The notes beneath the pieces were generated by a model, which searched no databases, had not been told where the DNA came from, and saw only the letters and a program-made list of their open reading frames with translations. From NCBI RefSeq assembly GCF_006345805.1, contig NW_021825917.1, positions 1 to 14,011 on the forward strand: a stretch of DNA of 14,011 nucleotides, read 5' to 3'. The stretch is from Octopus sinensis. Taxonomy: Eukaryota. Both the position numbers and the translations under genes were made by a program. This document shows, one piece after another, positions 1-14,011 of this stretch; positions within the stretch are counted from its first letter, which is position 1, and the number at the start of each line of letters is the position of its first letter.

Positions 1-20
1 ATTGGTGTATATACATATTA

Positions 21-24
21 TATG

Positions 25-55
<31 letters not shown>

Positions 56-97
56 TGTATGTATGTATGTATGTATGTAATGTATGTATGTATGTAT
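21..97. repeat. (TATG)n microsatellite
   Basis: Near-perfect tandem TATG run. Confidence 0.95.
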
Positions 98-267
98 AAA
101 GACATTTGTATAAGGTATTACGTTGCTGGATGGAACCTAAGATATGATGATAATAAAGCATACTTCATAAGTACTCTGTAAGCGTATATAAGACCTCGGA
201 GGTCGTTATAGATCTGGACAAAACTCACAAGAGAAGGGCTGGCCCATCAAATGGAACCCAGGACTCT

Positions 268-555
268 ATTTTAGCGATTCAACGAAGGGGCGAAAAGCAA
301 GGTTGGCATCGGATGGACTTCAAATCAGAAATTGCGATCAATGTCACAAGTTACCAACGCTCTAACGATTCTACCACAGCACCCCGCTCCTATAATTATT
401 TCAAATTTTGGGGCAAGTTCAGCCATTTTGAGGCGAGGGTCTTAATTGATAGGTCAACATAAATACTTGACTGGTACTTTATTTTGTCGACCTCGGAAGG
501 ATGAAAGCCAAAATTGACCTTGGCGGCACTGGAAACTACGATTTAAAACGACGCG
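268..555 (-). mobile_element. Two heavily decayed tandem SINE family A remnants
   Basis: Degenerate matches to blocks of the young copies in this window: ACTGGTACTTTATTTTGTCGACCTCGGAAGGATGAAAGCCAAAATTGACCTTGGCGG and CTAACGATTCT (reverse complement of the A-box region). Boundaries approximate. Confidence 0.6.
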
Positions 556-570
556 ATAATGGTTGTGTCT

Positions 571-808
571 TTTTTCTTTCACTTGTTTCAGTCATGTGAC
601 TGTGGCCATGCTGGAGCACCGCCTTTAGTCAAACAAATCGACCCCGGGACTTATTCTTTGTAATCCTAGTACTTATTTTATCGGTGTCTTTTGCCGACAC
701 GCTAACATCGGTTGACAAGCGATGGTGGGGGGACAAACACACACATATATGTATATCTACGACAGGCTTCTTTCAGTTTCCGTCTAATAAATCCACTCAC
801 AAGGCTTT
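571..808 (-). mobile_element. SINE family B, 5'-truncated copy (3' tail at left, internal CA/TA microsatellite)
   Basis: Shares CTGTGGCCATGCTGGAGC...GTACTTATT...TTGCCGA...GCTAA...GATTGACAAG with the copy at 10562-10780. A-rich tail and 3' hairpin on the minus strand. Resembles a common Octopus SINE (recalled). Confidence 0.75.
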
Positions 809-816
809 ATATATAC

Positions 817-860
817 GGCCGCAGCTCTGAGCTGAAACTAGAAAAAAAATAGAAAAAAAA
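817..860 (+). mobile_element. Isolated SINE 3' tail remnant related to family B (hairpin plus (TAGAAAAAAAA)2)
   Basis: GGCCGCAGCTCTGAGCTGAAACTAG aligns with the family B tail GGCCACAGTCACATGACTGAAACAAG. Confidence 0.5.
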
Positions 861-1086
861 TATATATATTACATATATATATATATATATAACATATATA
901 AATATATATAATAGTATAGATAGATAGATAGATAGATAGATATATAGATAGATAGATAGAGATAGATAGATAGATAGTAATATCGATAGATAGATAGATA
1001 TGTAACGTTGCACATATATGTATATATGTATGTGTGTATATATATGTGTATGTATGTATGTATGTATGTATGTATGTATGTTATAT
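861..1086. repeat. Compound (TA)n/(TAGA)n/(TATG)n microsatellite
   Basis: Direct inspection. Confidence 0.95.
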
Positions 1087-1304
1087 GTAGCCATAGACTT
1101 TCTGAGGACTGTGTGCCCGGTGGTAGAAGAGGAGGTGTTGGGCGACCGGGAGGGTTGAGGTTATGTAGGAAAGATTAGAACACTTAACGACCGGATGGCA
1201 TGCTGAAAGGACGGCGGGACATCACCTCCACCATAGGGTTTGTCAGAATATAGGTCTGTTATTTTTAGGGTCTCATGTACAACATTGTATAAATAACCAA
1301 ATTA

Positions 1305-1498
1305 TACGCACGCAGACACACGCACACAACCACACGCTCACACACATACACACACGAACACATTGAGGAATGTGACATCAATACACAGTAGAATATATGT
1401 AATATAAACATATATAGGATATTATACACGCAAGCACGTAATCACATGTATATATATATACATAAATTACACACATACATATACGCATGCGCGCGTAC

Positions 1499-1534
<36 letters not shown>

Positions 1535-1965
1535 CCATACAGACACGCACACATACACACACAAACACAAATATATATATATACATATATATATAGATAT
1601 ATAGATATATATATATATATGTATGTATGTATATATGGATATAGATTGATAGATATAGATATATAGATATGTATATATGGGGCCCGTAGGTATATGCGCA
1701 CGTTTTGACGCATGACCTTGCATATATGCGTACAATATGTATATTTATATTAAATGAATATGTGTGTGTGTATACATGCACGCACACACACCTATATGTA
1801 CGTGTATGTACGTGTTTATATATATGTATATATATATATAAATATATATACATATACATGTATATATACACATGTATATATATATATATATATATATATA
1901 CATACATACATACATACATACATACATACATACATACATACATACATGTATACATATATACACAC
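1305..1965. repeat. Compound (CA)n/(TA)n/(TAGA)n/(CATA)n low-complexity block
   Basis: Direct inspection; source of the I/Y/H/T-rich spurious ORFs. Confidence 0.9.
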
Positions 1966-2067
1966 ATAATTAAAGAGTTAACGATTCACCGCTGTTTAAT
2001 TATAAATACCAACTTTATATAACCAGTTGAGTGCGCTGTCCTTTGCACGCAACAACGCGCACGCTGC

Positions 2068-2186
2068 ATGTATGTATATATATATATATTGTATGTATGT
2101 ATGTATGCATGTGTGTGTGTGTATCGCATACATATATGTGTGTATGAATGCGTGTACGGATGTGTATACACACGCGCGCGCGCGCA
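2068..2186. repeat. (TA)/(TATG)/(TG) microsatellite ending in (CG)6 at 2173-2184
   Basis: Direct inspection. Confidence 0.9.
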
Positions 2187-2628
2187 CAAAGAAGGTGATT
2201 TGGTAAAACAAACAGGATAAATAAAACCACAATCCATGAATAAATACATTGTATTATCTTTAATCGGCAGAACTTCCAAGGTGGCTCAGAGGACCCATTA
2301 GAAGTACACCACACGCATTAAATGCCAAGAAGGTTCGCCAAGGACGGCGAAACTATAAAGTCATTCGCACCATCTATTATAAAGAATCTATTTTCTTGAC
2401 TCTGCCTTTCATATTGAGCACTCTATGTGTTAACGATTTATCAGAAATTCATATATACTAAAAACCGCAGCGAGAATCAAACTGTCTTTCCCTCATTGCT
2501 TGATGACTCCTTGAGATTATCACATTTTTGCCGTTAAGTGTTTGTATACTTTCTCTCGAAGCGAAATATAGTTTCAGTAAATGGAAGATGTTATTTAGAA
2601 TGGTATTTAGTATATTTTGTAGAAATTC

Positions 2629-2760
2629 GTGGCCAAGTCGTTGGGGCGTTGCATTCACGCTCGCTGGATCGTGGTTTCGATTCCCTGTCCGGTTGGTGCG
2701 TCGTGTTCTTGAGCAAAACACTTCATTTCATGCTGCTCCGGCCCAATCGGTTGTAAATAG
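2629..2760 (+). mobile_element. tRNA-derived SINE family C with CORE-like central domain
   Basis: A-box-like TGGCCAAGTCG (2630-2640), B-box-like GGTTTCGATTCC (2673-2684), then GTGTTCTTGAGCAAAACACTTCATTTCA...TGTAAAT, resembling the recalled CORE motif GTGACCTTGGGCAAGTCACTT...CTGTAAAAT. Second copy at 8990-9211 (-). Confidence 0.75.
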
Positions 2761-3168
2761 ACTGGCTTTCCACTGGATTGTCCTTCCGATGGACTGGCCT
2801 TCCAATGGACTTGCCTTCCGACGGACTGGCTTTCCGACGGACTGGCCTTCCAACGGACTGGCCTTCCGATGGACTTGCCTTCCGACGAACTGGCCTTCCG
2901 ATGGACTGGCCTTCCAATGGACTTGCCTTCCACTAGATTGGCCTTCCGACGGACTGACCTTCCGATGGACTGGCCTTCCGACGGACTGCCTTCCGACGGA
3001 CTGGCCTTCCGATGGACTGGCCTTCCGACGGACTGGCCTTCCGACGGACTGCCTTCCGACGGACTGGCCTTCCGATGGACTGGCCTTCCGACGGACTGCC
3101 TTCCGACGGACTGGCCTTCCGATGGACTGGCCTTCCGATAGACTGGCCTTCCGATAGACCGGCCTTCC
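2756..3168 (+). repeat. 16-bp minisatellite (GAYGGACTGGCCTTCC), 26 units, three of them 15 bp
   Basis: Units counted by hand from 2756 to 3168. Confidence 0.97.
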
Positions 3169-3171
3169 GAT

Positions 3172-3202
<31 letters not shown>

Positions 3203-3353
3203 CGATGATGATGGTGATGGTGGTGGCGGTGGTGATGGTGACAATGATGGTGATGACGAGGATGATGGTGAGGAGGATGAGGATGAGGATAATGATGATG
3301 GTGAGGGTGGTGGTGGTGGTGATGGTGACAATGATGATGACGACAATGATGAT
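3169..3353. repeat. Compound (GAT)n/(GGT)n/(GAG) trinucleotide microsatellite
   Basis: Direct inspection; begins seamlessly with the GAT of the last minisatellite unit. Confidence 0.95.
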
Positions 3354-3529
3354 GCTGAAAATACCAGCCAATCATAGTAGATTTATAACTGTTACACTTG
3401 CCCGTCATTCATTAGTCAGGTGTGGCAGTGATTAGCATGAAATATTAACCAAATTAAAGATATCTAAACAAAATGTGCAAGAGTTCGATTCCCAGCAGGG
3501 TCGTTGTTACTTCTTTTTTTTTTATTTTA

Positions 3530-3794
3530 GGTATGTGTCTGTGTGTCCTCCCCCCACATGTGTACGAGTATGAGAATGCGTGTGTTGCTGTTTGTGTGTG
3601 CATTTGCGTGTATGTGTGCGTGTGCGTGTGTCTGTGTGTCTGTGCGTGTCTCTGTGTGTATGCAGGTGGGTGGAAGTGTATGTATTCGTGTAAAAATGTG
3701 TCGCTTACACATTGCCCTCACACACATCTTCAACCATATATACGCACAGCAGCGCACACATACACACACTCCTATAACAGCATACCTACACCAG

Positions 3795-3841
<47 letters not shown>

Positions 3842-3870
3842 CACATACATAGAGAGCGCCACCTACACAC
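3530..3870. repeat. Degenerate (TG)n followed by (CA)n/(TA)n
   Basis: Direct inspection. Confidence 0.85.
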
Positions 3871-3959
3871 TCAGACACACGGACAGAAGCAGCAGGTTTA
3901 TGGATGTCGAAGCCTCCAGGGAGATATCTATTAACACCAATGAGCGGTGAGTGAAAATA

Positions 3960-4306
3960 AAATGTGTGTATATAGCGTGTGTATGTGTGTGTGTATTTGT
4001 GCGTGTGTATGTGTGTCTGCGTGTGTGTGTGTGTATGTTTGTGCGTGTGTCTTTGTGTGTCTGTGCGTGTGTGTGTGTGTGTTTGTGTGTCTGCGCGTGT
4101 GTGTGTGTGTGTGTGTGTCTGTGTGTGTGTGTCTATGTGTGTGTGTGTGTGTGTCTGTCTGCGTGTGTGTGTGTCTTTGTGTTTGTGTGTGTGTGTGTTT
4201 GTGTGTTTGTGTGTGTGTTTGTGTGCCTGCGTGTGTGTGTGTTGTGTGTTTGTGAGTGTGTGTTTGTATGTGTGTGTGTTTGTGCGTGTGTGTGTTTGTG
4301 CGTGTA

Positions 4307-4344
<38 letters not shown>

Positions 4345-4590
4345 GAGATAGAGAGAGAGAGAGAGAGAGAAAGAGGGAGATGGTAGAGAGAGAGAGAGAG
4401 TAGAAAGAGAGACAGACAGACAGACAGACGTAGATAGTCAGGCATATATATGCGGGAATGAGACGAAAGCAGAAAGGTAAGAGAGAGGCAAAGGTAACTT
4501 GTGGGAAAGAGACAGACAGACAAATAGAGAGAAAGAGAGAGGCGGGGGGAGAGATAGAAAGAGAGAGAGAGATAGAAAGAGAGAGAGAGT
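3960..4590. repeat. Long imperfect (TG)n, then (TA)n, (GA)n/(GACA)n polypurine tract
   Basis: Direct inspection. Confidence 0.95.
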
Positions 4591-4734
4591 GTTGCGTATA
4601 ATTTGGCACCGTTTGATAATTTATTGCTGGTAAAAACTAACAAATGTGGGATGTGACGGTGGGGTGGTGGGTGGTAGTTGAATGGATCGAGGGTATGTGG
4701 TGGGGGGATCAGTAAGGGTCAATAAGGGTCGTTA

Positions 4735-4760
<26 letters not shown>
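4735..4760. repeat. (GA)n microsatellite in G-rich context
   Basis: Direct inspection. Confidence 0.95.
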
Positions 4761-4767
<7 letters not shown>

Positions 4768-4931
4768 AGTGGTGGAGGGTAGGGATAAAGAGTGAGTGTG
4801 GCGGGGGTGAGGGGATTATTGTTTACAACTTTGCGCTCCATTAAACCAATTGGTCGAGATGATATTTAAAACATTGAAGTGTTTGTTGTTGTAGTTGTCG
4901 TTGGCGGTGGTGGTGGTAATAGAGACGGCGA

Positions 4932-5349
4932 AAGGTGGCCAGATGGCAGAACTGGTAGCGCGCCGGGCGAAATGCTAAGCAGTATTTAGTCTGCCGTTAC
5001 GTTCTGAGTTCAAATTCCGCCGAGGTCGACTTTGCCCTTCATCCTTTCGGGGTCGATTAAATAAGTACCAGTTACGCGCTGGGATCGATATAATCGACTT
5101 AATCCGTTTGTCTGCCCTTGTTTGTTCCCTCTGTGTTTAGCCCCTTGTGGGTAGTAAAGAAATAGGTATTTCGTCTGCCGTTACGTTCTGAGTTCGAATT
5201 CCGTCGAGATCGACTTTGCCTTTCATCCTTTCGGTGTCGATTAAATAAGTACCAGTTACGCACTGGGGTCGATATAATCGACTTAATTCCTTTGTCTGTC
5301 CTTGTTCGTCCCCTCTGTGTTTAGCCCCTTGTGGGTAGTAAAGAAATAG
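4932..5349 (+). mobile_element. Young tRNA-derived SINE family A, dimer (one head plus two 184-bp body units)
   Basis: A-box TGGCAGAACTGG (4944-4955), B-box GAGTTCAAATTCC (5006-5018). Unit repeats from 4982 to 5166 (period 184). Tail GTAGTAAAGAAATAG. The central GCCTTTCATCCTTTCGGGGTCGATTAAATAAGTACCAG resembles the recalled Meta/MESC SINE domain (unverified). Confidence 0.9.
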
Positions 5350-5510
5350 ATATGGGCCGGTTTAAATGCTAAAGGGAGAAATCCGGTTTGCTTCGTTATA
5401 CACTAAATTCCCTCTGAGCGGAATGAAAAAACCACGTCGAGCCTGGTTCCAATTCAAAAACCGGAGAATGAAAACGAAACTGTGCTGAATATTTCATTGA
5501 AAGATCGGTG

Positions 5511-5691
5511 CAACGCCTGAAATTCGAGGGAGGATATCATCGTTCAAGTGAATGACTGGAATTTTATTTTATCGATCCTGGAGGATTAAAAGACAAAATC
5601 GATTGCTGTAGGATTTGAACTCAGAACGCTGAAACAAATATTATGAGTCCTTGTTTTCACCCCACCCCCGCCTCAGATGCTCTAACGATTC
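5511..5691 (-). mobile_element. Old, decayed SINE family A host copy (CAAGGCCTGAAATT-type tail) interrupted at its A box
   Basis: CAACGCCTGAAATT tail, GGATTTGAACTCAGAACG B-box region, ends at CTAACGATTCT. Confidence 0.65.
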
Positions 5692-6115
5692 TTATTTCTT
5701 TACTGCCCACAAGGGGCTAAACATAGAGGGGACATATAAGGACAGACAAAGGAATTAAGTCGATTACATCGACCCCAGTGCGTAACTGGTACTTATTTAA
5801 TCGACTCCCGATTGGATGAAAAGCAAAGTCGACCACGGCGGAATTTGAACTCAGAACGTAGCGGCAGACGAAATACCTATTTCTTTACTACACACAAGGG
5901 GCAAAATGAAAACATAGAGGGGACAAACAAGGACAGACAAAGGAATTAAGTCGATTACATCGACCCCAGTGCATAACTGGTACCTATTTAATCGACCCCG
6001 AAAGGATGAAAGGCAAAGTCGACCTCGGTAGAATTTGAACTCAGAACGTAGCGGCAGACGAAATACCGCTAAGCATTTCGCCCGGTGTGCTAACGTTTCT
6101 GCCAGCTCGCTGCTT
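5692..6115 (-). mobile_element. Young SINE family A dimer
   Basis: Two body units (CTCAGAACG at 5850 and 6040; period 190 with an insertion of about 6 bp) and a head ending GCCAGCTCGC at 6101-6110. Confidence 0.9.
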
Positions 6116-6179
6116 GAGGGCGTGAAACTTAGTCCATCGTCTTAACTACTCGTCTGCGATGACCAAGTCTAAGAATTCG

Positions 6180-6785
6180 TTCTAGTGTAGGTACAAGGCC
6201 TGAAATTTTGAGGTGGGGGAGACGATTACATTTGTACTTTTATTTTTCATCGACCTCGTAAGAATAAAATGCAAAGTCGGCCTCAGTGGAATTTGAACTC
6301 AAAGCATAAAGCCGGAAGAAATACCGCTAAGCACTTTGTCCGGTACATTAACGATTAACAACCCGAGGCCAGCAATCTAGAAGAGGTGGGGTTAGTCGAT
6401 ACTATTGACCCCAGAACTTAACTGGTACATTATTTTATCCACCCTGAAAAGATGAAGAGAAAAGTTGACTTCGGTGGGATTCGAACACAGAACATAAAGT
6501 CGGAAGAAAAGTGCCAAGCATTTTGTTCGACGCACTAACGATTCTACCAATCCACAGCAACAACAATAATGATTCTTTCACAAGGCCTGAAATTTCGGTG
6601 GGAGGGACTAGTCGATCATATCGACCCCAGTGCTCGATTGGTACTTCTTTTATCGATCTCGAAAGGATGAAAAGACACGTCGATCTCGATGGAATTTGAA
6701 TTCAGACCGTCGTAAAGACGGACGAAATGCCGCTTAGCATTTTCTCCGGTGCACTTACGATTCTGTCAGCTCACAACCTTCGCCT
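6180..6785 (-). mobile_element. Three head-to-tail older SINE family A copies (about 6180-6360, 6380-6550, 6570-6785)
   Basis: Each shows the GGTAC(T/A)TT-ATCGA-GATGAAA-GGAATTTGAACTCA-GAAATACCGCTAAGCA-CTAACGATT block order, with many substitutions. Confidence 0.75.
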
Positions 6786-6813
6786 TAATAATAAAATGAC
6801 GATAATTTGTTTC

Positions 6814-7238
6814 GGATCTTTTCGGTTTGAACGGCAGTTTTTTTTAATAATTTCCACGTAACTAAACACTTTTAAACTTCGCATACTGGTAGAATATGTT
6901 TATAAAACATCTTTTTCTCCTGGCTTTATTGAGAAAATTCTATAGTCTGTAAGATATTTGTTGTTTTTTTTTCTTCAATTTCTGCAATTTCAACCAATCA
7001 ATGACGTCTGTTGAGATGAAAACATTCTGTGCCGTATGAATATGTCCCTCGTTTAAGAAACAGATTGGGTTTATTTACATTTCTGAAGAAAAAAAAGATG
7101 CCCTTCCCCCCACCTATAACCCTAACCCTAACCCTAAAACAGATTGAAATGCAATAGATCGATACTTGGCTCATAATTATGGGTGACAATTTCATATGAC
7201 ACCGCTAGAAAAAACTGCCGTTCAAACCGAAAAGATCC
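6814..7238. mobile_element. 425-bp MITE (non-autonomous DNA transposon), 30-bp perfect TIRs, 8-bp TSD
   Basis: GGATCTTTTCGGTTTGAACGGCAGTTTTTT (6814-6843) is the exact reverse complement of 7209-7238. TTTGTTTC is directly repeated at 6806-6813 and 7239-7246. No transposase ORF. Confidence 0.95.
7117..7137 (-). repeat. Interstitial telomeric-type repeat (TTAGGG)3.5 inside the MITE
   Basis: TAACCCTAACCCTAACCCTAA. Confidence 0.9.
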
Positions 7239-7703
7239 TTTGTTTCTAACATTGATGCATGTGTAATGTTGGGAAAACAGGGCAAAATCGGTACGAATCT
7301 ACCCCAGAATGGGGAAAGGAAAAGTTGTCTCTTGTAAAATTCGAACTTACAACGTAAAAGAGAGAGACTTTACACTATAAACGATCGAGTTTGCCATTCA
7401 CGAATCTACTTAAATAACATTCACATCTGTGACAACAACAACAAAACTAACAAAACAATATGTTGAATTTAAATGCAAATTAGAACGATTAGCTCAACCA
7501 TAATGTGTATATGTCAATATATATTTCAACACACATACATGTGGGTGTATACATACATATTTGTGTATGTTTGTATGTAGGTGAGAGAGAAAGAGAGAGA
7601 GATTAAAAGAAAAATTATAAATAAGAAATAAAATAATACAATATCTTCTTTCAAAGTCGCATTCCATGACAGGGAAATAAACTGAAGGTTTGTGTATGGA
7701 ATC

Positions 7704-8348
7704 ATGTCAGTTCTTCTAAGAAATCCCACCCTAAATCATCGACTGGAAGTGATTGTTCAACCACAATACTTCGAAGAGGCTCTTTCATGTCTTGTGGAAT
7801 CAATCATATACGTAAGAAGCAAAGGCAAAATGGTACGGGATCCAAAACTTGTTTATCGCGAAGACACGATGAAAACGGCCATGAAATACTGCACATCGTT
7901 TAATCTGCAATATTCTTGTAATGAATCGAGTGAACTTCAGAGCAGAATTCTGGACCAAATCCAAAGAATTCGGTGGCTTTGCTGCGTAGAAGGACAAAAT
8001 GCAAACTGCAGTTTGAGCATGAAATTCTACAAGAATTTCATCAGTCCAACTAAATTTAGCAGTGCTCTGCAAATTTTTGAAATATGGCAGATACGCATTC
8101 GAATAGTGACTTGCGCAGAGGCGGGACATTCTCAAAACCAAGTACAGGAAATGGTAAATACTTTAAGGGACTGTATATCTTATATCCACGAATGCAAATT
8201 TTGTATTTCCCCTTTATCGAACATTGATACTTTTGAAGATTTGGTCAATATTCTTGACTTGGTATCCTTCACTGATGTTTCGTTGTATCATTTCTTCTTT
8301 GATCTTAACTTCCAAAATCCTGATGAAGATCAAAGCGTTTCGCAATAA
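7704..8348 (+). CDS. ATG101: Divergent ATG101-like HORMA-domain protein, 214 aa, uninterrupted ORF
   Basis: First in-frame ATG at 7704 (A at -3; in-frame TGA upstream at 7683-7685; the track's 7692 start is GTG). Gap-free hand alignment to recalled human ATG101 over 122 aa with 29 identities: LEVIVQPQYFEEAL/LEVSVEGRQVEEAM, RSKGK/RSTGK, YCTSFNLQY/DCDFIDFTY, SSEL/SEEL, SLSMKFYK/QMSLEFYQ, FEIWQIRIRIV/WEVWTVKVHVV, LRDCISYIHE/LCEKIINIVE, DVSLY/DVQPY. 645 nt open in AT-rich, non-repetitive DNA. Confidence 0.87.
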   Translation: MSVLLRNPTLNHRLEVIVQPQYFEEALSCLVESIIYVRSKGKMVRDPKLVYREDTMKTAMKYCTSFNLQYSCNESSELQSRILDQIQRIRWLCCVEGQNANCSLSMKFYKNFISPTKFSSALQIFEIWQIRIRIVTCAEAGHSQNQVQEMVNTLRDCISYIHECKFCISPLSNIDTFEDLVNILDLVSFTDVSLYHFFFDLNFQNPDEDQSVSQ

Positions 8349-8349
8349 A
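8344..8349 (+). terminator. Candidate polyadenylation signal AATAAA overlapping the TAA stop
   Basis: CAATAAAA contains the stop codon (8346-8348). GT/T-rich tract GTTTCGGTTTTTGGTTTT lies 15-35 nt downstream. Use unproven; a second AATAAA lies at 8441-8446. Confidence 0.4.
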
Positions 8350-8409
8350 ATGATTTCTTTGAAGTTTCGGTTTTTGGTTTTATTATTTTGACATGTGGAT
8401 TTTTCTATG

Positions 8410-8610
8410 CGGTGGATTTGTAGAATCGCTAGAGCGTCAGAATAAAACGGCCTTGTGGTTTGTTTTCCGATTCGTTACGTTCTGAGTTCAAATCCTGTAG
8501 AGATAACCTCTCATCCTTTTGAGATCGCCAAAATAAGTACCAGTAAATTTAGTGGGGTCGATGCAATAGGCTTGGCTCTTCCCTTAGAATTACTGGCATT
8601 GTAGTAAAAT
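8410..8610 (+). mobile_element. Decayed SINE family A copy just 3' of the ATG101-like ORF
   Basis: TGTAGAATCGCTAG head, GTTACGTTCTGAGTTCAAATCC B-box region, CATCCTTTT...AATAAGTACCAG...GGGGTCGATG body. Confidence 0.7.
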
Positions 8611-8989
8611 TAGAACTTTTTAATTAATTTATCTAACGGTTATATTTCAAAAAATGCTTTATTTGTTAAGCTTATAATTATTTTTATGCCATTTTTAATA
8701 TTCCAAAAGGAAAACGGCCACTTCCAGAATACGATAGAGTAACTTAATATATTTTGCTACTTTCGTTTCTTTCGCGTTCAAAACTATCCGAAGGTAATAT
8801 TTATTTTACCTCCCTCCTAGGATCGAAATAATAATGTTTTAAATCGATCGCACCCTTACACCTAAAATTGCTGTCTGTCTTCTAAATTTAGGAATATCCA
8901 CTTTTTCTTAAAAAGATTAAATATGACATTTTTGTTGTACAATATTGATTTCTAGTCTAGACTTAAGTATTATCGCAAGTTCTAAAACT

Positions 8990-9211
8990 CCCGGGGCCGG
9001 TTACCCAGTATCCACGGCCTCTAAGTGAACGACATCACACCATTCACCCTGATCGGAAGACTAATCCGTCGCCAGGTTACTCATTTACAGTCAAGTGAAC
9101 TGGGGCAATGTGAAATGAAGTGTCTTGCTCAAGAACATAACGCACCACTCGGTCTGGGAATGGAAACCAAAATCTTATGTTCGTAAGTGAAATACCCAAA
9201 CCGTTAGGCCA
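8990..9211 (-). mobile_element. SINE family C (CORE-like) near full-length copy
   Basis: Minus strand: A-box TGGCCTAACGG (9211-9201), GGTTTCCATTCCC, ATGTTCTTGAGCAAGACACTTCATTTCAC...CTGTAAATGAGTAACC; colinear with 2629-2760. Confidence 0.75.
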
Positions 9212-9268
9212 GGTTCCTTCACAACTTATACCTAAGGTCACTAATATATTCTGTGTGCAGGGAAATAC

Positions 9269-9464
9269 TTTTCTACTCTAGGCACAAGGCCTGAAATTTT
9301 GGGGGAAGAGGCAGTCGATTAGATCGACCCCAGTGCGTAACTGGTACTTAATTTATCGACGCCGAAAGAATGAAAAGCAAAGTCGACCTCGGCGGAATTT
9401 GAACTCAGAACGTCAAGTCAGACGAAATACTACTAAGCATTTCACCCGGCGTGCTAACGTTTCT
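9269..9464 (-). mobile_element. SINE family A host copy (CAAGGCCTGAAATTTT tail) interrupted at its A box
   Basis: Well-preserved body ending at GTGCTAACGTTTCT. Confidence 0.85.
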
Positions 9465-9861
9465 TATTGCCCACAAGGGGTTAAACATAGAGGGGACAAA
9501 CAAGGACAGACAAAGGGATTAAGTCGATTGCATCGACACCAGTGCGTAACTGATACTTATTTAATCGACCCCGAAAGAATGAAAGGCAAAGTCGACCTCG
9601 GCGGAATTTGAACTCAGAACGTAGCGGCAGACGAAATACCTATTTCTTTACTACCCACAAGGGGCAAAACATAGAGGGGACAAACAAAGGAATTAAGTCG
9701 ATTACATCGACTCCAGTGCGTAACTGGTACTTATTTAATCGACCTCGAAAGAATGAAAGGCAAAGTCGACCTCGGCGGAATTTGAACTCAGAACGTAGCG
9801 GTAGACGAAATACCGCAAAATATTTCGCCCGGCGTGCTGGCAATCCTGCCAGCTCGCCGCC
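9465..9861 (-). mobile_element. Young SINE family A dimer
   Basis: Two body units (CTCAGAACG at 9613 and 9787; period 174 owing to a small deletion) and a head ending GCCAGCTCGCCGCC. Confidence 0.9.
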
Positions 9862-10491
9862 CTCTAAGGATAGATATTGATGAGTATGAATCTCTTTTTA
9901 AATATAATTCTGGAGAACCAGCTACCTTGTGTTACTCATTTCCACCCTGAATATGTTATAATGTTTTCAAGGCCTTTAGAGAAGGGCATTTGCTTTGCTG
10001 ATATAGTTTTGTAAAGTAGTGAACCTTTGCACAAAATAATTTTTTCTCAGTCAAAACTGTAGTAAATTATCCTCGTTGTGACCCCTACCCCACCCTGCAA
10101 CAAAATACATTTTGGTCATTGTTCTACTCACCGTCGCCACCCACACTTATTTCTTTTGTCTATGGGTTGCATTACACGCGTTACGGTATCTTTTACTCGT
10201 GGGTTCAAATCCTGTTGATTCAACTTAACTTTTTGTTTTATCAAAGCTGACAGAATTACCTTTAATACACATTACGATTATTGACAGCCAATTATTTGAT
10301 TTATTAAATAATTTGCAAACAAATCATTGATCTTTGATTCAAATCCTTGCCATTCTCCTTCTCCACGAACTAATGATAGTTGTTCCAAAAGTCCGGCAAT
10401 CAACTTTTACACCCGTTTCACGAGTATAACAATAGTCGCTTTACTAATCCTTTGGTCCATAAAAGATTAAAAATTGACTGTTGATAATAGG

Positions 10492-10497
<6 letters not shown>

Positions 10498-10562
<65 letters not shown>
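10498..10562. repeat. Perfect (GA)n-(GT)n compound microsatellite
   Basis: Direct inspection. Confidence 0.97.
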
Positions 10563-10563
<1 letters not shown>

Positions 10564-10780
10564 GTTTCTGGCATTAAACTGTGGCCATGCTGGAGCTCTG
10601 CCTTGAAGAGCGAATCGACTCTAGGCTTTTTTTCCCCCTAAAGCCTGGTACTTATTCTGTCTGTTTCTTTGCCGATCGGCTAAGTTACGGGGACGTAAAC
10701 ACACCAACAACGATTGACAAGAGATGATAGGGAACACACACACGTACACACACACATATATATATATATACATATATATA
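10563..10780 (-). mobile_element. SINE family B, decayed and truncated at its internal CA/TA microsatellite
   Basis: CTGTGGCCATGCTGGAGC...AAAGCCTGGTACTTATTC...GCTAAGTTACGGGGACGTAAACACACC; colinear with 571-808. Confidence 0.7.
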
Positions 10781-10973
10781 CTCAGAACGTAGCGGCAGAC
10801 GAAATACTTTTTTCTTTACTACCCACAAGGGGCAAAACATAGAGGGGACAAACAAGGACAGACAAAGGAATTAAGTCGATTATATCGACCCCAGTACGTA
10901 ACTGGTACTTAATTTATCGACCCCGAAAGGATGAAAGGCAAAGTCGACCTCGGCGTAATTTGATCTCAGAACG
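10781..10973 (-). mobile_element. Circularly permuted single SINE family A body unit (184 bp plus 9-bp terminal redundancy)
   Basis: CTCAGAACG at 10781-10789 and 10965-10973; dimer-type tail/body junction inside at about 10801-10820; no head. Confidence 0.85.
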
Positions 10974-11206
10974 AACAGGACAAGTTATTACACTTGCAAA
11001 AGTTCAGGACAACTCATTACATCTGGTAAAGTACAGAACAAGAAAATTTTTACTTAAAATATTGCGGCTAAGGATAAAATTTCAAATATAATATTTAGAT
11101 TTAGAAAATATTAATTTTTATTAAAATTTTATTAGTCGTGAGCCAATGCCTATTTTTTAAATAATGAATTTACCTACCATATATACACTATTTTACTTTG
11201 TATTAA

Positions 11207-11260
11207 ACTTTAGATATTGGTACTTTAGTTATATTGGGACTTTAGTTATATTGGTACTTT
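11207..11260. repeat. 17-bp tandem repeat ACTTTAGTTATATTGG(T/G), about 3 copies
   Basis: Units at 11222 and 11239 plus degenerate flanking copies. Confidence 0.85.
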
Positions 11261-11439
11261 TGGCTGTGTCCATTTTTAATAAAATTATGGTACCTTTTTT
11301 AATCATAGTGTTATTTTGTATAACCGTAGATTGGTCTTGTGGTTTGTTCCAGGTGTGGCGTAGGTATAAAAAGGACACGAATGAGATTACAATTTTATAA
11401 TTCTACTGAAACAGCTGTTGTATATTTTGTGTTCTTTCA

Positions 11440-11606
11440 TATGTCTGTATGTGTGGTTTGAATATATATATGTGAATATATATGTGTGTGTGTGGTGTGG
11501 TGTGAATATATATATGCATATATATATATATGCATATATATATATATATATTATATATATGTAGAGGTAGGTACGTACATATATGTATATATGCATATGT
11601 TTTATT

Positions 11607-11668
<62 letters not shown>

Positions 11669-11680
11669 ACGGGTGTGTGT
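11440..11680. repeat. (TG)/(TA)/(GA) compound microsatellites
   Basis: Direct inspection. Confidence 0.9.
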
Positions 11681-11703
11681 GATTATGTATAGAAGAATAT
11701 ATT

Positions 11704-11715
11704 TATTTCTTTACT
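11704..11715 (-). mobile_element. 12-nt SINE-A tail micro-insertion flanked by 18-bp direct repeats
   Basis: TGTATAGAAGAATATATT at 11686-11703 and 11716-11733. The insert TATTTCTTTACT equals the reverse complement of the SINE-A terminus AGTAAAGAAATA. Confidence 0.7.
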
Positions 11716-11929
11716 TGTATAGAAGAATATATTAATAAAAGGAATTCCAACCTTGTCTGATTTTCACGTTTTATTTACAATCTTATAATGAAATAATATA
11801 ATATAATAAAATAAAATAATAGAATGTTAAATGTTCATTCTGATTGAACTAGAACTTTCATGCATTAAATTCTGCAATCTTCAGGTTCATGTAGTAGTGG
11901 TGACAGCCATGCTTCACAATTTTTGACTG

Positions 11930-11963
<34 letters not shown>

Positions 11964-12015
11964 ATGTTATATATATATATATATATATATTATATTATAT
12001 ATAGATATATATACC
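11930..12015. repeat. (TA)n microsatellite
   Basis: Direct inspection. Confidence 0.95.
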
Positions 12016-12148
12016 CATATGCACAAATACAAAACCTCCCTGAACTAGAACCTTTATACAAATATAACCCTTGCCATAATTATACTCTCAACGAGGGGCA
12101 ATTACACAATATTAATGCATCGTATTATCTCATCAGGCAGCCGAATGT

Positions 12149-12585
12149 GGCGAGCTGGCAGAATCGGTTGCACGCCCATTAAGATGCTTTGCGACATTTC
12201 ACCCGCTTTTTTTTTTTTTAATTCTGAGTTCAAATTCCGCCGAGGTCGACGTTACCTTTCATCCTTTTAGTTTCAGCAAAATAAATACCTATTTCTTTAT
12301 TACCCACAAGGGGCTAAACACAGAGGCAACAAACAAGGACAGACATAGGTATTAAGTCGATTACATCGACCCCAGTGCGTAACTGGTACTTTAATTTATC
12401 GACCCCGAAAGGATGAAAGGCAAAGTCGACCTCGGCGGAATTTGAACTCAGAACGTAACGGCAGACGTAATACCGCAAAGCATTTCGTCCGGCGTGCTAA
12501 CGTTTCTGCCAGCTCGCCGCCTTGCAGCAAAATAAATACCAGTTAAACCCTGGGGTCGGTGTAATCGACTTACCTTCTTCCACTA
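12149..12585 (+). mobile_element. Older SINE family A host copy split by an antisense insertion
   Basis: A-box TGGCAGAATCGG (12156-12167), B-box GAGTTCAAATTCC (12226-12238). The body resumes after 12540 with CAGTTAAACCCTGGGGTCGGTGTAATCGAC. Confidence 0.8.
12290..12524 (-). mobile_element. Full-length young SINE family A monomer (235 bp) with 16-bp TSD
   Basis: TSD CAGCAAAATAAATACC at 12274-12289 and 12525-12540; head AAGGCGGCGAGCTGGCAGAAACGTTAG; tail AATAAAGAAATA. Confidence 0.95.
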
Positions 12586-13409
12586 AAACAACCATAAACC
12601 AAAAAGCCCTCAATATGTTGAACCCTTACCCCACCCACTCTTACAAATGTGTGGACTCTTTCAACTTAATAAATCGAGAAACCAAAAACATCAGGATGCA
12701 ATCTTCTAAAGCCGCGATTTTTAAGTTCAAACTCTGCCGAAGTCAATTAAATTATGTTCTGCCCTAATAATGTTTTCTCACCCTCATGTATATAATTTCA
12801 TACGATCCAGACACTAATATAGTATTTCAGAAAGAAATGTGTGTGTGCGTGTGTGTGTGAGAATGTGGACTAGTTAGTAACAGTAGAATGATATTTGATC
12901 TCTTACACAAACTTTGTTATATTAAGGGAAGAAAGAAACAGGATATGTTGAAAATTGTTGTGTTTCTTTTTCCTACGGTCATTAAAGTCCTTAATTGAAA
13001 TGAGTTTGTGAAACCAGGCGACTAACTTTTCATATTAAGAATAGATTTCCTGCCCTAAACTACGAAAAGCTCGCTTCCTTTTAAGAATACTCTTCAAGCA
13101 ATAAGATATATGATGGCTCTTTTATTGACGCGCAGTATTAAGGTTAACCAGACACGGAAACATTTATTCTCTTCAAAAGGGACATTAAGGACTTCTTTTT
13201 GTAAGGGCTCAGTCTGCAGAGTAAGGGCCGTGTCAACGAATTGTTTCCTGGGCCTCCGTGATGTGCGGATTGAAGTTTTCTTGAAACCAGAGTCTTGGCC
13301 CCAGTATTTGTAGCAGTGTGAGTTCTGTTAAATACAGCGAAATATGATATGGTGGAATTATATCGGGCGACATTTGAAGTCTGTCCTCAGCAGAACAGAA
13401 ATGATCCTT

Positions 13410-13520
13410 TCTACGGACGACTTCCACGGTTTCTGTTTACTAAATTTCAGTCACGTTTTTGTCGATGCGAGGCTATGGAAGATACTTGCACGACGTACAA
13501 TTGGATTGAAACCAAATTAA
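13410..13520 (-). mobile_element. Decayed SINE family B-like head-proximal fragment
   Basis: GGTTTCTGTTTACTAAATTTCAGTCACG resembles CAGTTTCCGTCTAATAAATCCACTCAC at 775-800, followed by GAGGCTATGGAAGATACTTGC (recalled family continuation). Confidence 0.45.
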
Positions 13521-13559
13521 TGCATTATCTTTGATGGCATATAAGATGCGGCTTCCCGC

Positions 13560-14011
13560 ACAAGGCCAAGTCAGGGAAGATGTGGAACATGCACCGTTGC
13601 AGCACGTTGCAGCCCGTTGCTATCATTCACCATTTGTCAGTATATTTCCAGGTCCACTCGGAGATCCGCAGGCCAGAGTCCAAACTGGTCTCCATCTCCT
13701 CATCTGCTGTATCCATGTGGCATGCGGTTGATCAACACAAGCCATCAGTCTATCAGGATCCTCAGAGAAGAGAACACTAAGCAGGATCTAACTCGGGAAA
13801 TTGGGCAACATGGCCAGTCAGTCTGAGCTGGCGCACATGAATCATACAAGTAGAAGGACGCATTCCAGTTTCTGTGTAAAGTCATTGACTGGATGCGAAA
13901 TTCGATCAATGGCAACCCATAATACTACGAAATGCTCTGATATCAAAGGAATTCAGATGGCCCCTAAGTGCTCCTGGCCTTAGAGTATCTTGATATAAGA
14001 TAAAACCCAGT
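13560..14011 (-). mobile_element. Decayed RTE-clade non-LTR retrotransposon (LINE), 3' end of ORF
   Basis: Minus-strand frame reads LRGHLNSFDIRAFRSIMGCH*SNFASSQ*LYTETGMRPSTCMIHVRQLRLTGHVAQFPELDPA*, then after a frameshift EDPD...PHATWIQQM and ATCCNGACS. This matches the recalled RTE C-terminal pattern RRI.G..W.DFVSN..L...TG....I..RQLRL.GHVAR. Stops at 13906-13908, 13882-13884 and 13777-13779. Probably continues beyond the window. Confidence 0.8.

What the first reader, a model, noticed from the sequence alone, without database searches (positions are those of the whole stretch)
7704..8348. Highly divergent, intact ATG101 paralogue: a possible non-canonical HORMA autophagy regulator
Seen: a 214-codon open frame in non-repetitive DNA whose translation aligns gap-free for 122 aa (29 identities) and nearly gap-free to the end against recalled human ATG101. 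Established: ATG101 is a HORMA-fold subunit of the ULK1-ATG13-FIP200 complex, usually single-copy and strongly conserved in animals. Inference: about 24% identity with perfect length conservation and no stops or frameshifts fits a fast-evolving paralogue under selection for the fold rather than the orthologue or a pseudogene. It also carries 10 Cys versus 5 in human.
Basis: partly seen in the sequence, partly recalled or inferred. Interest (0 to 1): 0.88.

Follow-up and report, generated by a model that had tools for sequence, protein, structure and literature searches.

The report
Divergent intronless ATG101 copy in octopus
This octopus scaffold carries an intact, fast-evolving, intronless second copy of the autophagy gene ATG101. 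It is kept under selection in octopods but lacks both parts that anchor the normal protein to membranes, so it probably modulates autophagy rather than acting as a standard subunit.

Summary
Window 7704-8348(+) is a 214-codon ORF that passes Pfam's ATG101 threshold (39.5 bits against a cut-off of 26.5) and matches human ATG101 structures.

The same genome has a canonical ATG101 on another contig (C16). That gene has at least 7 coding exons and its exons are 48-67% identical to human. So this is a paralogue. It is single-exon, which points to a retrogene origin.

It belongs to a small clade: only 5 clusters among 5.8 billion proteins. Members are an Octopus-level orthologue (76% identical), Argonauta hians (34%) and three unidentified relatives. 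The clade is monophyletic (100/100) on a very long stem.

Selection is relaxed but purifying. dN/dS is 0.55 in one close pair and 0.22 in another. The coding sequence is 86% identical between species while the flanks are 68-73%, and all indels are in frame.

The predicted fold is ATG101-type HORMA (TM 0.84 to 5XV4).

All members lack the Trp of the WF finger and the whole C-terminal amphipathic helix. These are the two membrane-docking and PI3K-linking elements of ATG101. Only 11 of 55 canonical-conserved positions survive.

My best reading is an ATG101-derived HORMA adaptor that may pair with ATG13 without docking to membranes. Expression and binding partner are untested. It is a new variant of a known kind, of moderate interest.

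The parts
7704..8348 (+). Single-exon coding sequence (214 codons plus TAA) of a divergent ATG101 paralogue (protein P0001). The predicted HORMA domain covers residues ~10-202. The C-terminal tail is short, acidic and unstructured.
   Evidence: ORF. Pfam PF07855 at 39.5 bits. PDB ATG101 hits. AF2 pLDDT 86.7 and Foldseek TM 0.84 to 5xv4_N. Orthologues with intact frames and dN/dS below 1.
7616..7621 (+). TATAAA, a TATA-like box 89 nt upstream of the ATG. It sits at the equivalent place (-87) in the orthologous contig L005. This is a candidate core promoter element, inferred only.
   Evidence: plus the sequences. Its function was not tested. It is absent at that position in the Argonauta and P0004-group loci.
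8344..8349 (+). AATAAA overlapping the stop codon, conserved in the Octopus-level orthologue. This is a candidate polyadenylation signal, inferred only.
   Evidence: A second AATAAA lies at 8441-8446. No transcript data were available.
8441..8446 (+). Second AATAAA, 93 nt after the stop. This is an alternative candidate polyadenylation signal.
   Evidence: It is not conserved in L005.
7308..7703 (+). 5' flank that aligns with the orthologous contig at 68% identity with 13 gap openings. It serves as the near-neutral yardstick against which the coding sequence (86% identity, only in-frame indels) is conserved.
8349..8984 (+). 3' flank that aligns with the orthologous contig at 72-73% identity. 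It includes a SINE-like element at about 8455-8590 that both species share.

Best explanation
SHOWN:
- Window 7704-8348(+) encodes a 214-aa member of the ATG101 family. It is a paralogue of the genome's canonical, multi-exon ATG101 on contig C16.
- It is single-exon in every lineage where it was found.
- It belongs to a small monophyletic clade present at least in Octopodidae and Argonautidae.
- It evolves roughly ten times faster than canonical ATG101, yet it is under purifying selection.
- It is predicted to keep the ATG101-type 'open' HORMA fold with a short (5-residue) beta5-alphaC loop.
- All clade members have lost the Trp of the WF finger.
- All clade members end before the C-terminal amphipathic helix.

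INFERRED:
- It arose by retroposition of an ATG101 mRNA before the Octopus-Argonauta split, then acquired its own promoter.
[quoted passage not shown] The C-terminal region also links ATG101 to the PI3K complex. The dimerising HORMA core is kept.
- So the most likely mechanism is that the protein acts through HORMA-HORMA pairing. Its most plausible partner is the ATG13 HORMA domain, the only known partner of the parent protein.
- The resulting dimer could not dock on PI3P membranes. That would make it a lineage-specific attenuator or tissue-specific modulator of ULK-complex recruitment, not a redundant ATG101.

My confidence by layer: functional ATG101-derived paralogue 0.9; retrogene origin 0.7; ATG13-pairing, membrane-docking-deficient modulator 0.3.
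For: Family membership:
- Pfam PF07855 is above threshold for all 6 clade members tested.
- PDB ATG101 chains match by sequence.

Fold:
- AF2 with the mixed alignment gives pLDDT 86.7 and pTM 0.85.
- Foldseek top 14 hits are all human ATG101 chains: E 5e-17, TM 0.84, rmsd 2.3 A. S. pombe Atg101 and O-Mad2 follow.
- A paralogue-only alignment gives a weak model (pLDDT 53), but its top hits are again ATG101 (E 3e-11, TM 0.65).

Paralogy:
- Canonical exons lie on C16. They match P0013, annotated as Octopus vulgaris ATG101, at 99%.
- No second copy of P0001 exists in the genome.

Intron content: the paralogue has one exon here, in Argonauta (L020 10001-10624) and in the Logan contigs. The parent has at least 7 coding exons over more than 23 kb.

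Clade: a full HMMER scan of 1.84 billion representatives found only P0001, P0003, P0004 and P0005 ahead of canonical ATG101s at E about 1e-4. A profile search of 5.8 billion clusters found 5 clusters. The tree gives 100/100 support.

Selection:
- omega 0.55 (bootstrap 0.33-0.92, Fisher p 0.016).
- omega 0.22 (p 6e-5).
- Octopus-Argonauta dN is 0.56 with dS saturated.
- The coding sequence is 85.8% identical and the flanks 68-73%.
- About 14 indels are expected from the flank rate. Two were seen, both in frame.
- Under substitutions alone at flank-like divergence, the ORF would stay open in 0.1-2% of simulations.

Lost elements: W110 is T/T/S/D/D in the five paralogues. The C-terminal ~20 residues are absent.

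What those elements do:
[quoted passage not shown] - The C-terminal region binds PtdIns3K components (PMC8430637 citing Kim et al. 2018).

Other points:
- Many canonical-invariant positions are replaced by different residues that are themselves invariant in the clade: H26 to E, Q186 to S, L189 to H, P166 to S. That fits a changed function rather than decay.
- The aromatic residue at human Y45, the ATG9A-HDIR contact, is kept as Y/F.
Against: - No expression evidence. The Logan contigs break at repeats and look genomic.
- Binding to ATG13 is untested. Only 11 of 55 canonical-conserved columns survive, so the ATG13 interface may also have changed. I could not obtain the ATG101-side interface residues because the papers are not held.
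- The high-confidence AF2 model leans on canonical sequences in its alignment. The paralogue-only model is poor.
- Retroposition hallmarks (poly(A) tract, target-site duplications) were not seen.
- omega of 0.55 is high and could mix relaxed constraint with positive selection.
- The window is an unplaced 14-kb scaffold, so the host locus is unknown.
- One relative (L019) carries a frameshift.
Confidence: 0.5

Rival explanations
1. A neofunctionalised HORMA adaptor that has left the ULK complex. The paralogue keeps the fold but pairs with a different partner, either another HORMA protein or a peptide ligand, and works in a process other than autophagy initiation.
For: - 44 of 55 canonical-conserved positions are changed. 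Many are fixed to new clade-specific residues.
- The stem branch is extreme, at 6.5-7.6 substitutions per site.
- Cys content is 7-10 against 1 in the octopus parent.
- No divergent ATG13-like partner gene was seen.
Against: - The only documented role of the ATG101 fold is dimerisation with ATG13 (PMC4657174).
- The aromatic residue at the ATG9A-contact position and core motifs (R32, G35, K36, E120, W122 in human numbering) are retained.
- No alternative partner is suggested by any data here.
Confidence: 0.3
2. A rapidly evolving decoy in a genetic conflict. The paralogue would be under recurrent positive selection, for example as bait for a pathogen factor that targets ATG101/ATG13, or in reproductive conflict as with many young retrogenes. 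This would explain both the speed of change and the retention.
For: - 76% amino-acid identity between Octopus-level species, while canonical ATG101 is 99% identical across the same level.
- Pairwise omega is 0.55.
- The surface loops are variable, including the beta4-beta5 loop.
Against: - Pairwise omega is below 1 in both close pairs.
- There is no site-level test, because too few sequences are available and dS is saturated beyond the close pairs.
- The alphaA segment is strongly conserved within the clade.
Confidence: 0.12
3. A processed pseudogene, or a chance ORF with no function.
For: - The gene is intronless and embedded in SINE- and microsatellite-rich DNA on an unplaced scaffold.
- One relative has a frameshift.
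- There is no expression evidence.
Against: - The frame is intact in five lineages although synonymous divergence between them is saturated.
- omega is significantly below 1 in two pairs.
- Coding identity exceeds flank identity, and indels are only in frame.
- The chance of staying open under neutral change is 0.1-2% even for the closest pair.
Confidence: 0.05
4. The orthologous (only) ATG101 of this animal, or foreign or contaminant DNA.
For: It is the only ATG101 hit found as one piece in a six-frame Pfam scan. The scaffold is unplaced.
Against: - Canonical multi-exon ATG101 is present on C16.
- The flanks carry the same SINE family as the Argonauta locus.
- An orthologue sits in a 19.9-Mb Argonauta hians scaffold.
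- The flanks are homologous in a sister species.
Confidence: 0.01

Closest known systems
Canonical ATG101 (Pfam PF07855; human ATG101, PDB 4WZG/5C50/5XUY/8DO8; Octopus vulgaris ATG101 = P0013)
   Same: - The same family profile applies and the length is the same (214 against 218 aa).
- The order of secondary-structure elements is the same, as is the predicted open-HORMA fold (TM 0.84).
- The beta5-alphaC loop is short.
- Core residues are retained: E19, R32, G35, K36, C57, Y64, S69, L72, F102, E120, W122 and D179 in human numbering.
- The aromatic residue at Y45 is retained.
   Different: - 22-23% identity.
- Intronless, against at least 7 coding exons.
- The WF-finger Trp is absent.
- The C-terminal amphipathic helix is absent.
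- 44 of 55 metazoan-conserved positions are changed.
- 7-10 Cys against 1 in the octopus parent.
- About ten times the evolutionary rate.
- Restricted to a small cephalopod clade.
p31comet (MAD2L1BP), a divergent HORMA protein that mimics a Mad2 conformer and binds C-Mad2 to antagonise signalling
   Same: This is a functional analogy only. Both are diverged HORMA-fold proteins that could act by occupying the dimerisation face of a closed-HORMA partner without performing the partner's downstream function (PMC4657174).
   Different: There is no sequence relationship beyond the fold. p31comet is ancient and widespread. Antagonism by the octopus protein is hypothetical.
Engineered ATG101 WF|DD and delta-CTH mutants (bioRxiv 10.1101/2025.11.07.687251; Suzuki et al. 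2015; Kim et al. 2018)
   Same: The natural protein lacks the same two elements. In human cells these mutants still bind and stabilise ATG13, but fail in membrane docking and downstream recruitment.
   Different: The mutants differ from wild type only at those sites. The octopus paralogue differs almost everywhere, so retention of ATG13 binding cannot be assumed.
Functional retrogene paralogues of stress-pathway genes (e.g. HAPSTR2, PMC9834230)
   Same: It is an intronless copy of a conserved single-copy regulator, preserved under purifying selection in one clade.
   Different: It comes from a different protein family. Retroposition hallmarks are eroded here, and expression is unknown.

Membership tests
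ATG101 (Pfam PF07855) | Sequence matches the family profile above the curated gathering score | tested here: met
   39.5 bits against 26.5, E 6.6e-10. All 6 clade members match, best E 5.8e-12.
ATG101 (Pfam PF07855) | ATG101-type HORMA fold in the open (O-Mad2-like) topology, with a short beta5-alphaC loop | tested here: met
   AF2 gives pLDDT 86.7 and pTM 0.85. Foldseek top hits are ATG101 chains with TM 0.84 and rmsd 2.3 A. The loop at 135-139 is 5 residues, as described for Atg101. Caveat: the paralogue-only alignment gives pLDDT 53, though ATG101 remains the top hit.
ATG101 (Pfam PF07855) | WF finger: conserved Trp and Phe in the beta4-beta5 loop | tested here: not met
   Human W110 aligns to T/T/S/D/D. 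F112 is kept in three members and is V in two. There is no Trp between residues 105 and 125.
ATG101 (Pfam PF07855) | C-terminal amphipathic helix / C-terminal region (human ~199-218) | tested here: not met
   All paralogues end 10-15 residues after the last HORMA strand. Their tails are short and variable, and acidic in Octopus. AF2 confidence there is below 50.
ATG101 (Pfam PF07855) | Heterodimerises with the ATG13 HORMA domain and stabilises it | not testable with these tools
   No multimer prediction or assay was available. Canonical ATG13 is present on C7.
ATG101 (Pfam PF07855) | Orthology to metazoan ATG101 (shared exon structure and locus) | tested here: not met
   The canonical gene lies elsewhere (C16) with at least 7 coding exons. 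The paralogue clade is separate, with 100/100 support.
Retrogene (functional processed copy) | No introns, while the parent gene has introns | tested here: met
   It is a single ORF here, in Argonauta and in the Logan and ENA contigs. Parent exon map.
Retrogene (functional processed copy) | Located away from the parent gene | tested here: met
   Contig C2388 (unplaced, 14 kb) against C16. The chromosomal position of C2388 is unknown.
Retrogene (functional processed copy) | Poly(A) remnant and target-site duplications | tested here: inconclusive
   None is evident downstream of the stop in any lineage. Erosion is expected at this age.
Retrogene (functional processed copy) | Purifying selection and a conserved open frame across species | tested here: met
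   omega is 0.55 and 0.22. Coding identity is above flank identity, and indels are only in frame.
Retrogene (functional processed copy) | Transcribed | not testable with these tools
   The contigs found look genomic, because they break at repeats. No RNA-seq mapping was available.

The most novel reading that the evidence does not exclude
Octopods carry a natural 'membrane-blind' ATG101. It would be an old retrogene-derived HORMA protein that still pairs with ATG13 but cannot insert a WF finger or C-terminal helix into the membrane. It would then act as a built-in competitive brake or tissue-specific switch on ULK-complex recruitment. No such endogenous antagonist of autophagy initiation by HORMA mimicry, analogous to p31comet for Mad2, has been described in animals.
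Probability: 0.2. Interest if true: 0.75.

Novelty: new variant of a known kind. Interest (0 to 1): 0.52.

Why it matters
ATG101 is an essential, slowly evolving subunit of the autophagy-initiating ULK complex. In the searches run here, other animal lineages contributed only canonical-type sequences.

This lineage-restricted copy has been kept for a long evolutionary time while losing exactly the two elements recently shown to dock ATG101 on membranes. That makes it a ready-made natural separation-of-function variant. It could show which ATG101 activities depend only on the HORMA core.

If it binds ATG13, it would be the first candidate for an endogenous HORMA-mimic regulator of autophagy initiation.

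It also adds a dated example to the small set of documented functional retrogenes in cephalopods. The library searched holds no paper that mentions both ATG101 and octopus.

Tried and rejected
(1) Species behind the SRA/ENA runs that hold the relatives (SRR11869390/94, ERR12370320, ERR129213xx, SRR82816xx, ERZ21867824). Text searches found nothing usable. I therefore cannot say whether the P0004/P0005 group is another octopod family or a more distant cephalopod.

(2) Order of branching inside the clade. The free tree puts the P0004 group outside Argonauta plus Octopus. The alternative is not rejected (p-AU 0.32).

(3) ATG101-side residues of the ATG13 interface. The primary structure papers (Qi 2015, Michel 2015) are not held. 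I report only overall conservation by structural element.

(4) A co-duplicated divergent ATG13. The 214-aa open frame on C7 is just a large exon of canonical ATG13. The other hits are weak and carry stops.

(5) Synteny between the window and the Argonauta locus. Only a shared SINE family aligns.

(6) Transcript evidence from contig ends. The contigs end in A-rich or SINE repeats, so they look genomic.

(7) A 214-aa ORF 6 kb downstream in L019. It is a low-complexity frame with an internal stop and shows no resemblance to ATG101 on inspection.

(8) Rfam and tRNA scans of the window found nothing.

(9) AF2 with the paralogue-only alignment gave low confidence.

(10) Deep pairwise dN/dS. dS is saturated, so only pN/pS and dN are quoted.

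Full report
**1. Observation**

Window 7704-8348(+) is an ATG-to-TAA frame of 214 codons. It is the only long open frame in the 14,011-bp window that is not made of microsatellite or tandem-repeat DNA. At this base composition an open frame of that length is expected about 4e-4 times per window.

The protein (P0001) matches ATG101 by three measures:
- Pfam PF07855: 39.5 bits against a gathering score of 26.5, E 6.6e-10.
- Human ATG101 chains in the PDB: E about 3e-6 over residues 13-204.
- BLASTP: 23% identity to mouse ATG101 with three gap positions, and 22% to this genome's own canonical ATG101.

**2. Source and canonical copy**

The window is the whole of an unplaced 14-kb contig (C2388) of a 2.72-Gb, 13,516-contig genome.

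A six-frame search with the human sequence finds exon-sized matches at 48-67% identity on contig C16. Mapping the annotated Octopus vulgaris ATG101 (P0013) places at least six of its coding exons between 56,405,319 and 56,428,829 on the minus strand. The first exon, about 23 codons, lies outside the 30 kb I fetched. P0013 is 99% identical to my reconstruction from the genome.

So the animal is an Octopus and has a normal ATG101. The window's gene is a second copy, and P0001 has no other copy in the genome.

**3. Relatives**

A word-indexed search of 5.8 billion protein clusters found one close relative. This is P0002, 76% identical, from Logan contigs of runs SRR11869390/94.

A full HMMER pass over 1.84 billion representatives added three more:
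- P0003, 34% identical, 207 aa: Argonauta hians hypothetical protein GAB1601838.1, one exon on a 19.9-Mb scaffold.
- P0004, 40% identical, 216 aa, from Logan contigs. Close variants P0009-P0011 occur in eight further runs.
- P0005, from an ENA contig.

Canonical ATG101 sequences only appear at E about 1e-4 in that scan. A profile built from the clade retrieved the same five clusters and nothing else.

P0005's locus (L019) has one 1-bp insertion near codon 108. Both halves are otherwise open and conserved, so this is either an assembly error or a very recent lesion.

In maximum-likelihood trees the clade is monophyletic at 100/100 on a stem of 6.5-7.6 substitutions per site. Its attachment among canonical sequences is unresolved. 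Inside the clade, Octopus groups with the SRR species. The order of Argonauta and the P0004 group is not settled (p-AU 0.32).

Octopus and Argonauta belong to different families of Incirrata, so the gene predates that split. From my own knowledge that split is Mesozoic. I did not verify this here.

**4. Gene or relic?**

Against the Octopus-level orthologue:
- The coding sequence is 85.8% identical, while the alignable flanks are 68-73% identical.
- Nei-Gojobori dN/dS is 0.55 (bootstrap 0.33-0.92; Fisher p 0.016).
- The flanks carry 21 gap openings in 943 columns, which predicts about 14 in the coding sequence. Two are seen, both multiples of three.
- With substitutions alone at flank-like divergence, the frame stays open in 0.1-2% of simulations.

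An independent close pair, P0004 against P0009, gives dN/dS 0.22 (p 6e-5). Between Octopus and Argonauta, synonymous sites are saturated and dN is 0.56, yet both frames are intact.

This is a gene under relaxed but real purifying selection, not a pseudogene.

It evolves much faster than its parent. The path between the Octopus and Argonauta paralogues is 2.2 substitutions per site. Summing the canonical branches of the same tree from Octopus to Patella gives about 0.8.

**5. Origin**

The paralogue has no intron in any lineage. Its parent has at least seven coding exons spread over more than 23 kb.

Retroposition of an ATG101 mRNA is the simplest origin. This is an inference: no poly(A) remnant or target-site duplication is visible, as expected at this age.

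Two signals are conserved between the two Octopus-level species but not beyond them:
- A TATAAA at -89 (7616-7621).
- An AATAAA overlapping the stop codon (8344-8349).

They are candidate promoter and polyadenylation signals only.

**6. Structure**

With a 28-sequence alignment of paralogues and canonical proteins, AF2 gives pLDDT 86.7 and pTM 0.85. Foldseek's first 14 hits are human ATG101 chains (E 5e-17, TM 0.84, rmsd 2.3 A). S. pombe Atg101 and open Mad2 come next.

That model could be driven by the canonical rows, so I repeated the prediction with the six paralogues alone. Confidence falls to pLDDT 53 and pTM 0.60. The order of secondary-structure elements is the same, and ATG101 is still the top hit (E 3e-11, TM 0.65).

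The beta5-alphaC loop is 5 residues. This length is said to lock Atg101 in the open state.

**7. What is kept and what is lost**

Of 55 alignment columns at least 90% conserved in 19 canonical metazoan ATG101s, 11 are kept in all paralogues: E19, R32, G35, C57, Y64, S69, L72, F102, E120, W122 and D179 in human numbering. Fourteen are kept in the Octopus protein.

Many of the others are replaced by a different residue that is itself invariant in the clade, for example H26 to E, Q186 to S, L189 to H and P166 to S. This is the pattern of a changed constraint rather than none.

Two canonical elements are missing in every member:
- The Trp of the WF finger. Human W110 aligns to T/T/S/D/D. F112 is kept only in the Octopus and Argonauta proteins.
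- The whole C-terminal amphipathic helix. The proteins stop 10-15 residues after the last strand.

What the literature says about these elements:
[quoted passage not shown] - The C-terminal region also binds PtdIns3K-complex components and affects ATG101 ubiquitination (PMC8430637).
- The aromatic residue equivalent to Y45, needed for ATG9A-HDIR binding (bioRxiv 10.1101/2022.07.12.499634), is kept as Y or F.

Cys enrichment holds across the clade, at 7-10 against 1 in the octopus parent. C29 and C63 are invariant within the clade. I have no explanation for this.

**8. Mechanism**

Shown: this is a selected, ATG101-derived HORMA protein without the membrane-docking elements.

Inferred: it acts through HORMA pairing, most plausibly with ATG13. 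ATG13 is present as a normal gene on C7, and no second divergent copy was seen. The resulting dimer could not dock on PI3P membranes or bridge to PI3K. The protein would then be a lineage-specific attenuator or context-specific modulator, loosely like p31comet for Mad2 (PMC4657174). I put this at about 0.3.

The main rival, also about 0.3, is that the interface has changed as well and the protein has a new partner. A conflict-driven decoy is possible (0.12). Pseudogene, sole orthologue and contaminant are effectively excluded.

**9. Novelty**

No paper in the searched library mentions both ATG101 and octopus. The broader search for ATG101 with paralogue, retrogene or duplication terms required only two of six terms, and none of the 15 papers it listed contained ATG101, so it says little either way. 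The Argonauta protein is annotated only as hypothetical.

It is a member of the ATG101 family by profile and fold, but it fails two of the family's functional hallmarks. I therefore class it as a new variant of a known kind.

Interest is moderate. It is not a new kind of system. It is, however, an unusual, long-retained separation-of-function copy of an essential gene for which the searches here turned up no comparable second copy in other animals, and it gives a directly testable hypothesis.

Noticed in passing
window 4930-6800 and 9290-11040 (also ~8455-8590): The gene is flanked on both sides by many copies, in both orientations, of a ~184-nt SINE-like element with the core GGAATTTGAACTCAGAACG. 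The same family occurs at the Argonauta hians locus (L020 15053-15226). The copy just 3' of the ORF is shared with the orthologous contig L005. ARAGORN and Rfam do not recognise it.
   Followed up: partly
window 2760-3171: A tandem array of a 16-bp unit (GACTGGCCTTCCGATG, about 26 copies), followed by (ATG)n and long (GT)n/(AG)n tracts up to ~4430. These produce long spurious ORFs of 200-310 aa on both strands.
   Followed up: no
window 7120-7137: Three tandem CCCTAA units (telomere-type repeat) about 570 bp upstream of the ATG. This is a very short interstitial tract of unknown significance.
   Followed up: no
L019 10001-11130 (ENA ERZ21867824 ctg94170l): The orthologue in this unidentified relative has a single 1-bp insertion near codon 108, in a GTTTT run. 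Both halves are otherwise open and conserved. This is either an assembly error or a very young pseudogene. The source's gene caller read it with TGA=W and produced a scrambled C-terminal half (P0005).
   Followed up: partly
G000:C16 56,405,319-56,428,829 (-); protein P0013: The canonical octopus ATG101 has a single Cys. Its C-terminal tail (…TSTFLPNPIGKIFNRSLQM) departs from the metazoan consensus (…SVxTTMRKFIKDTLAL). Its terminal branch is longer than those of other molluscs in the trees.
   Followed up: no
window 1-14011 = G000:C2388: The whole window is one unplaced 14-kb scaffold, and it holds the only copy of this gene in the assembly. The chromosomal context of the paralogue in Octopus is therefore unknown.
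   Followed up: partly
P0006/P0012 (Anopheles bellator / A. cruzii 'ATG101-like') and P0008: These were the best canonical-type hits to the octopus paralogue. They are themselves somewhat divergent ATG101s. P0008 has an insertion in the WF-finger loop and lacks the Trp. Variation of this loop may not be unique to octopods.
   Followed up: no
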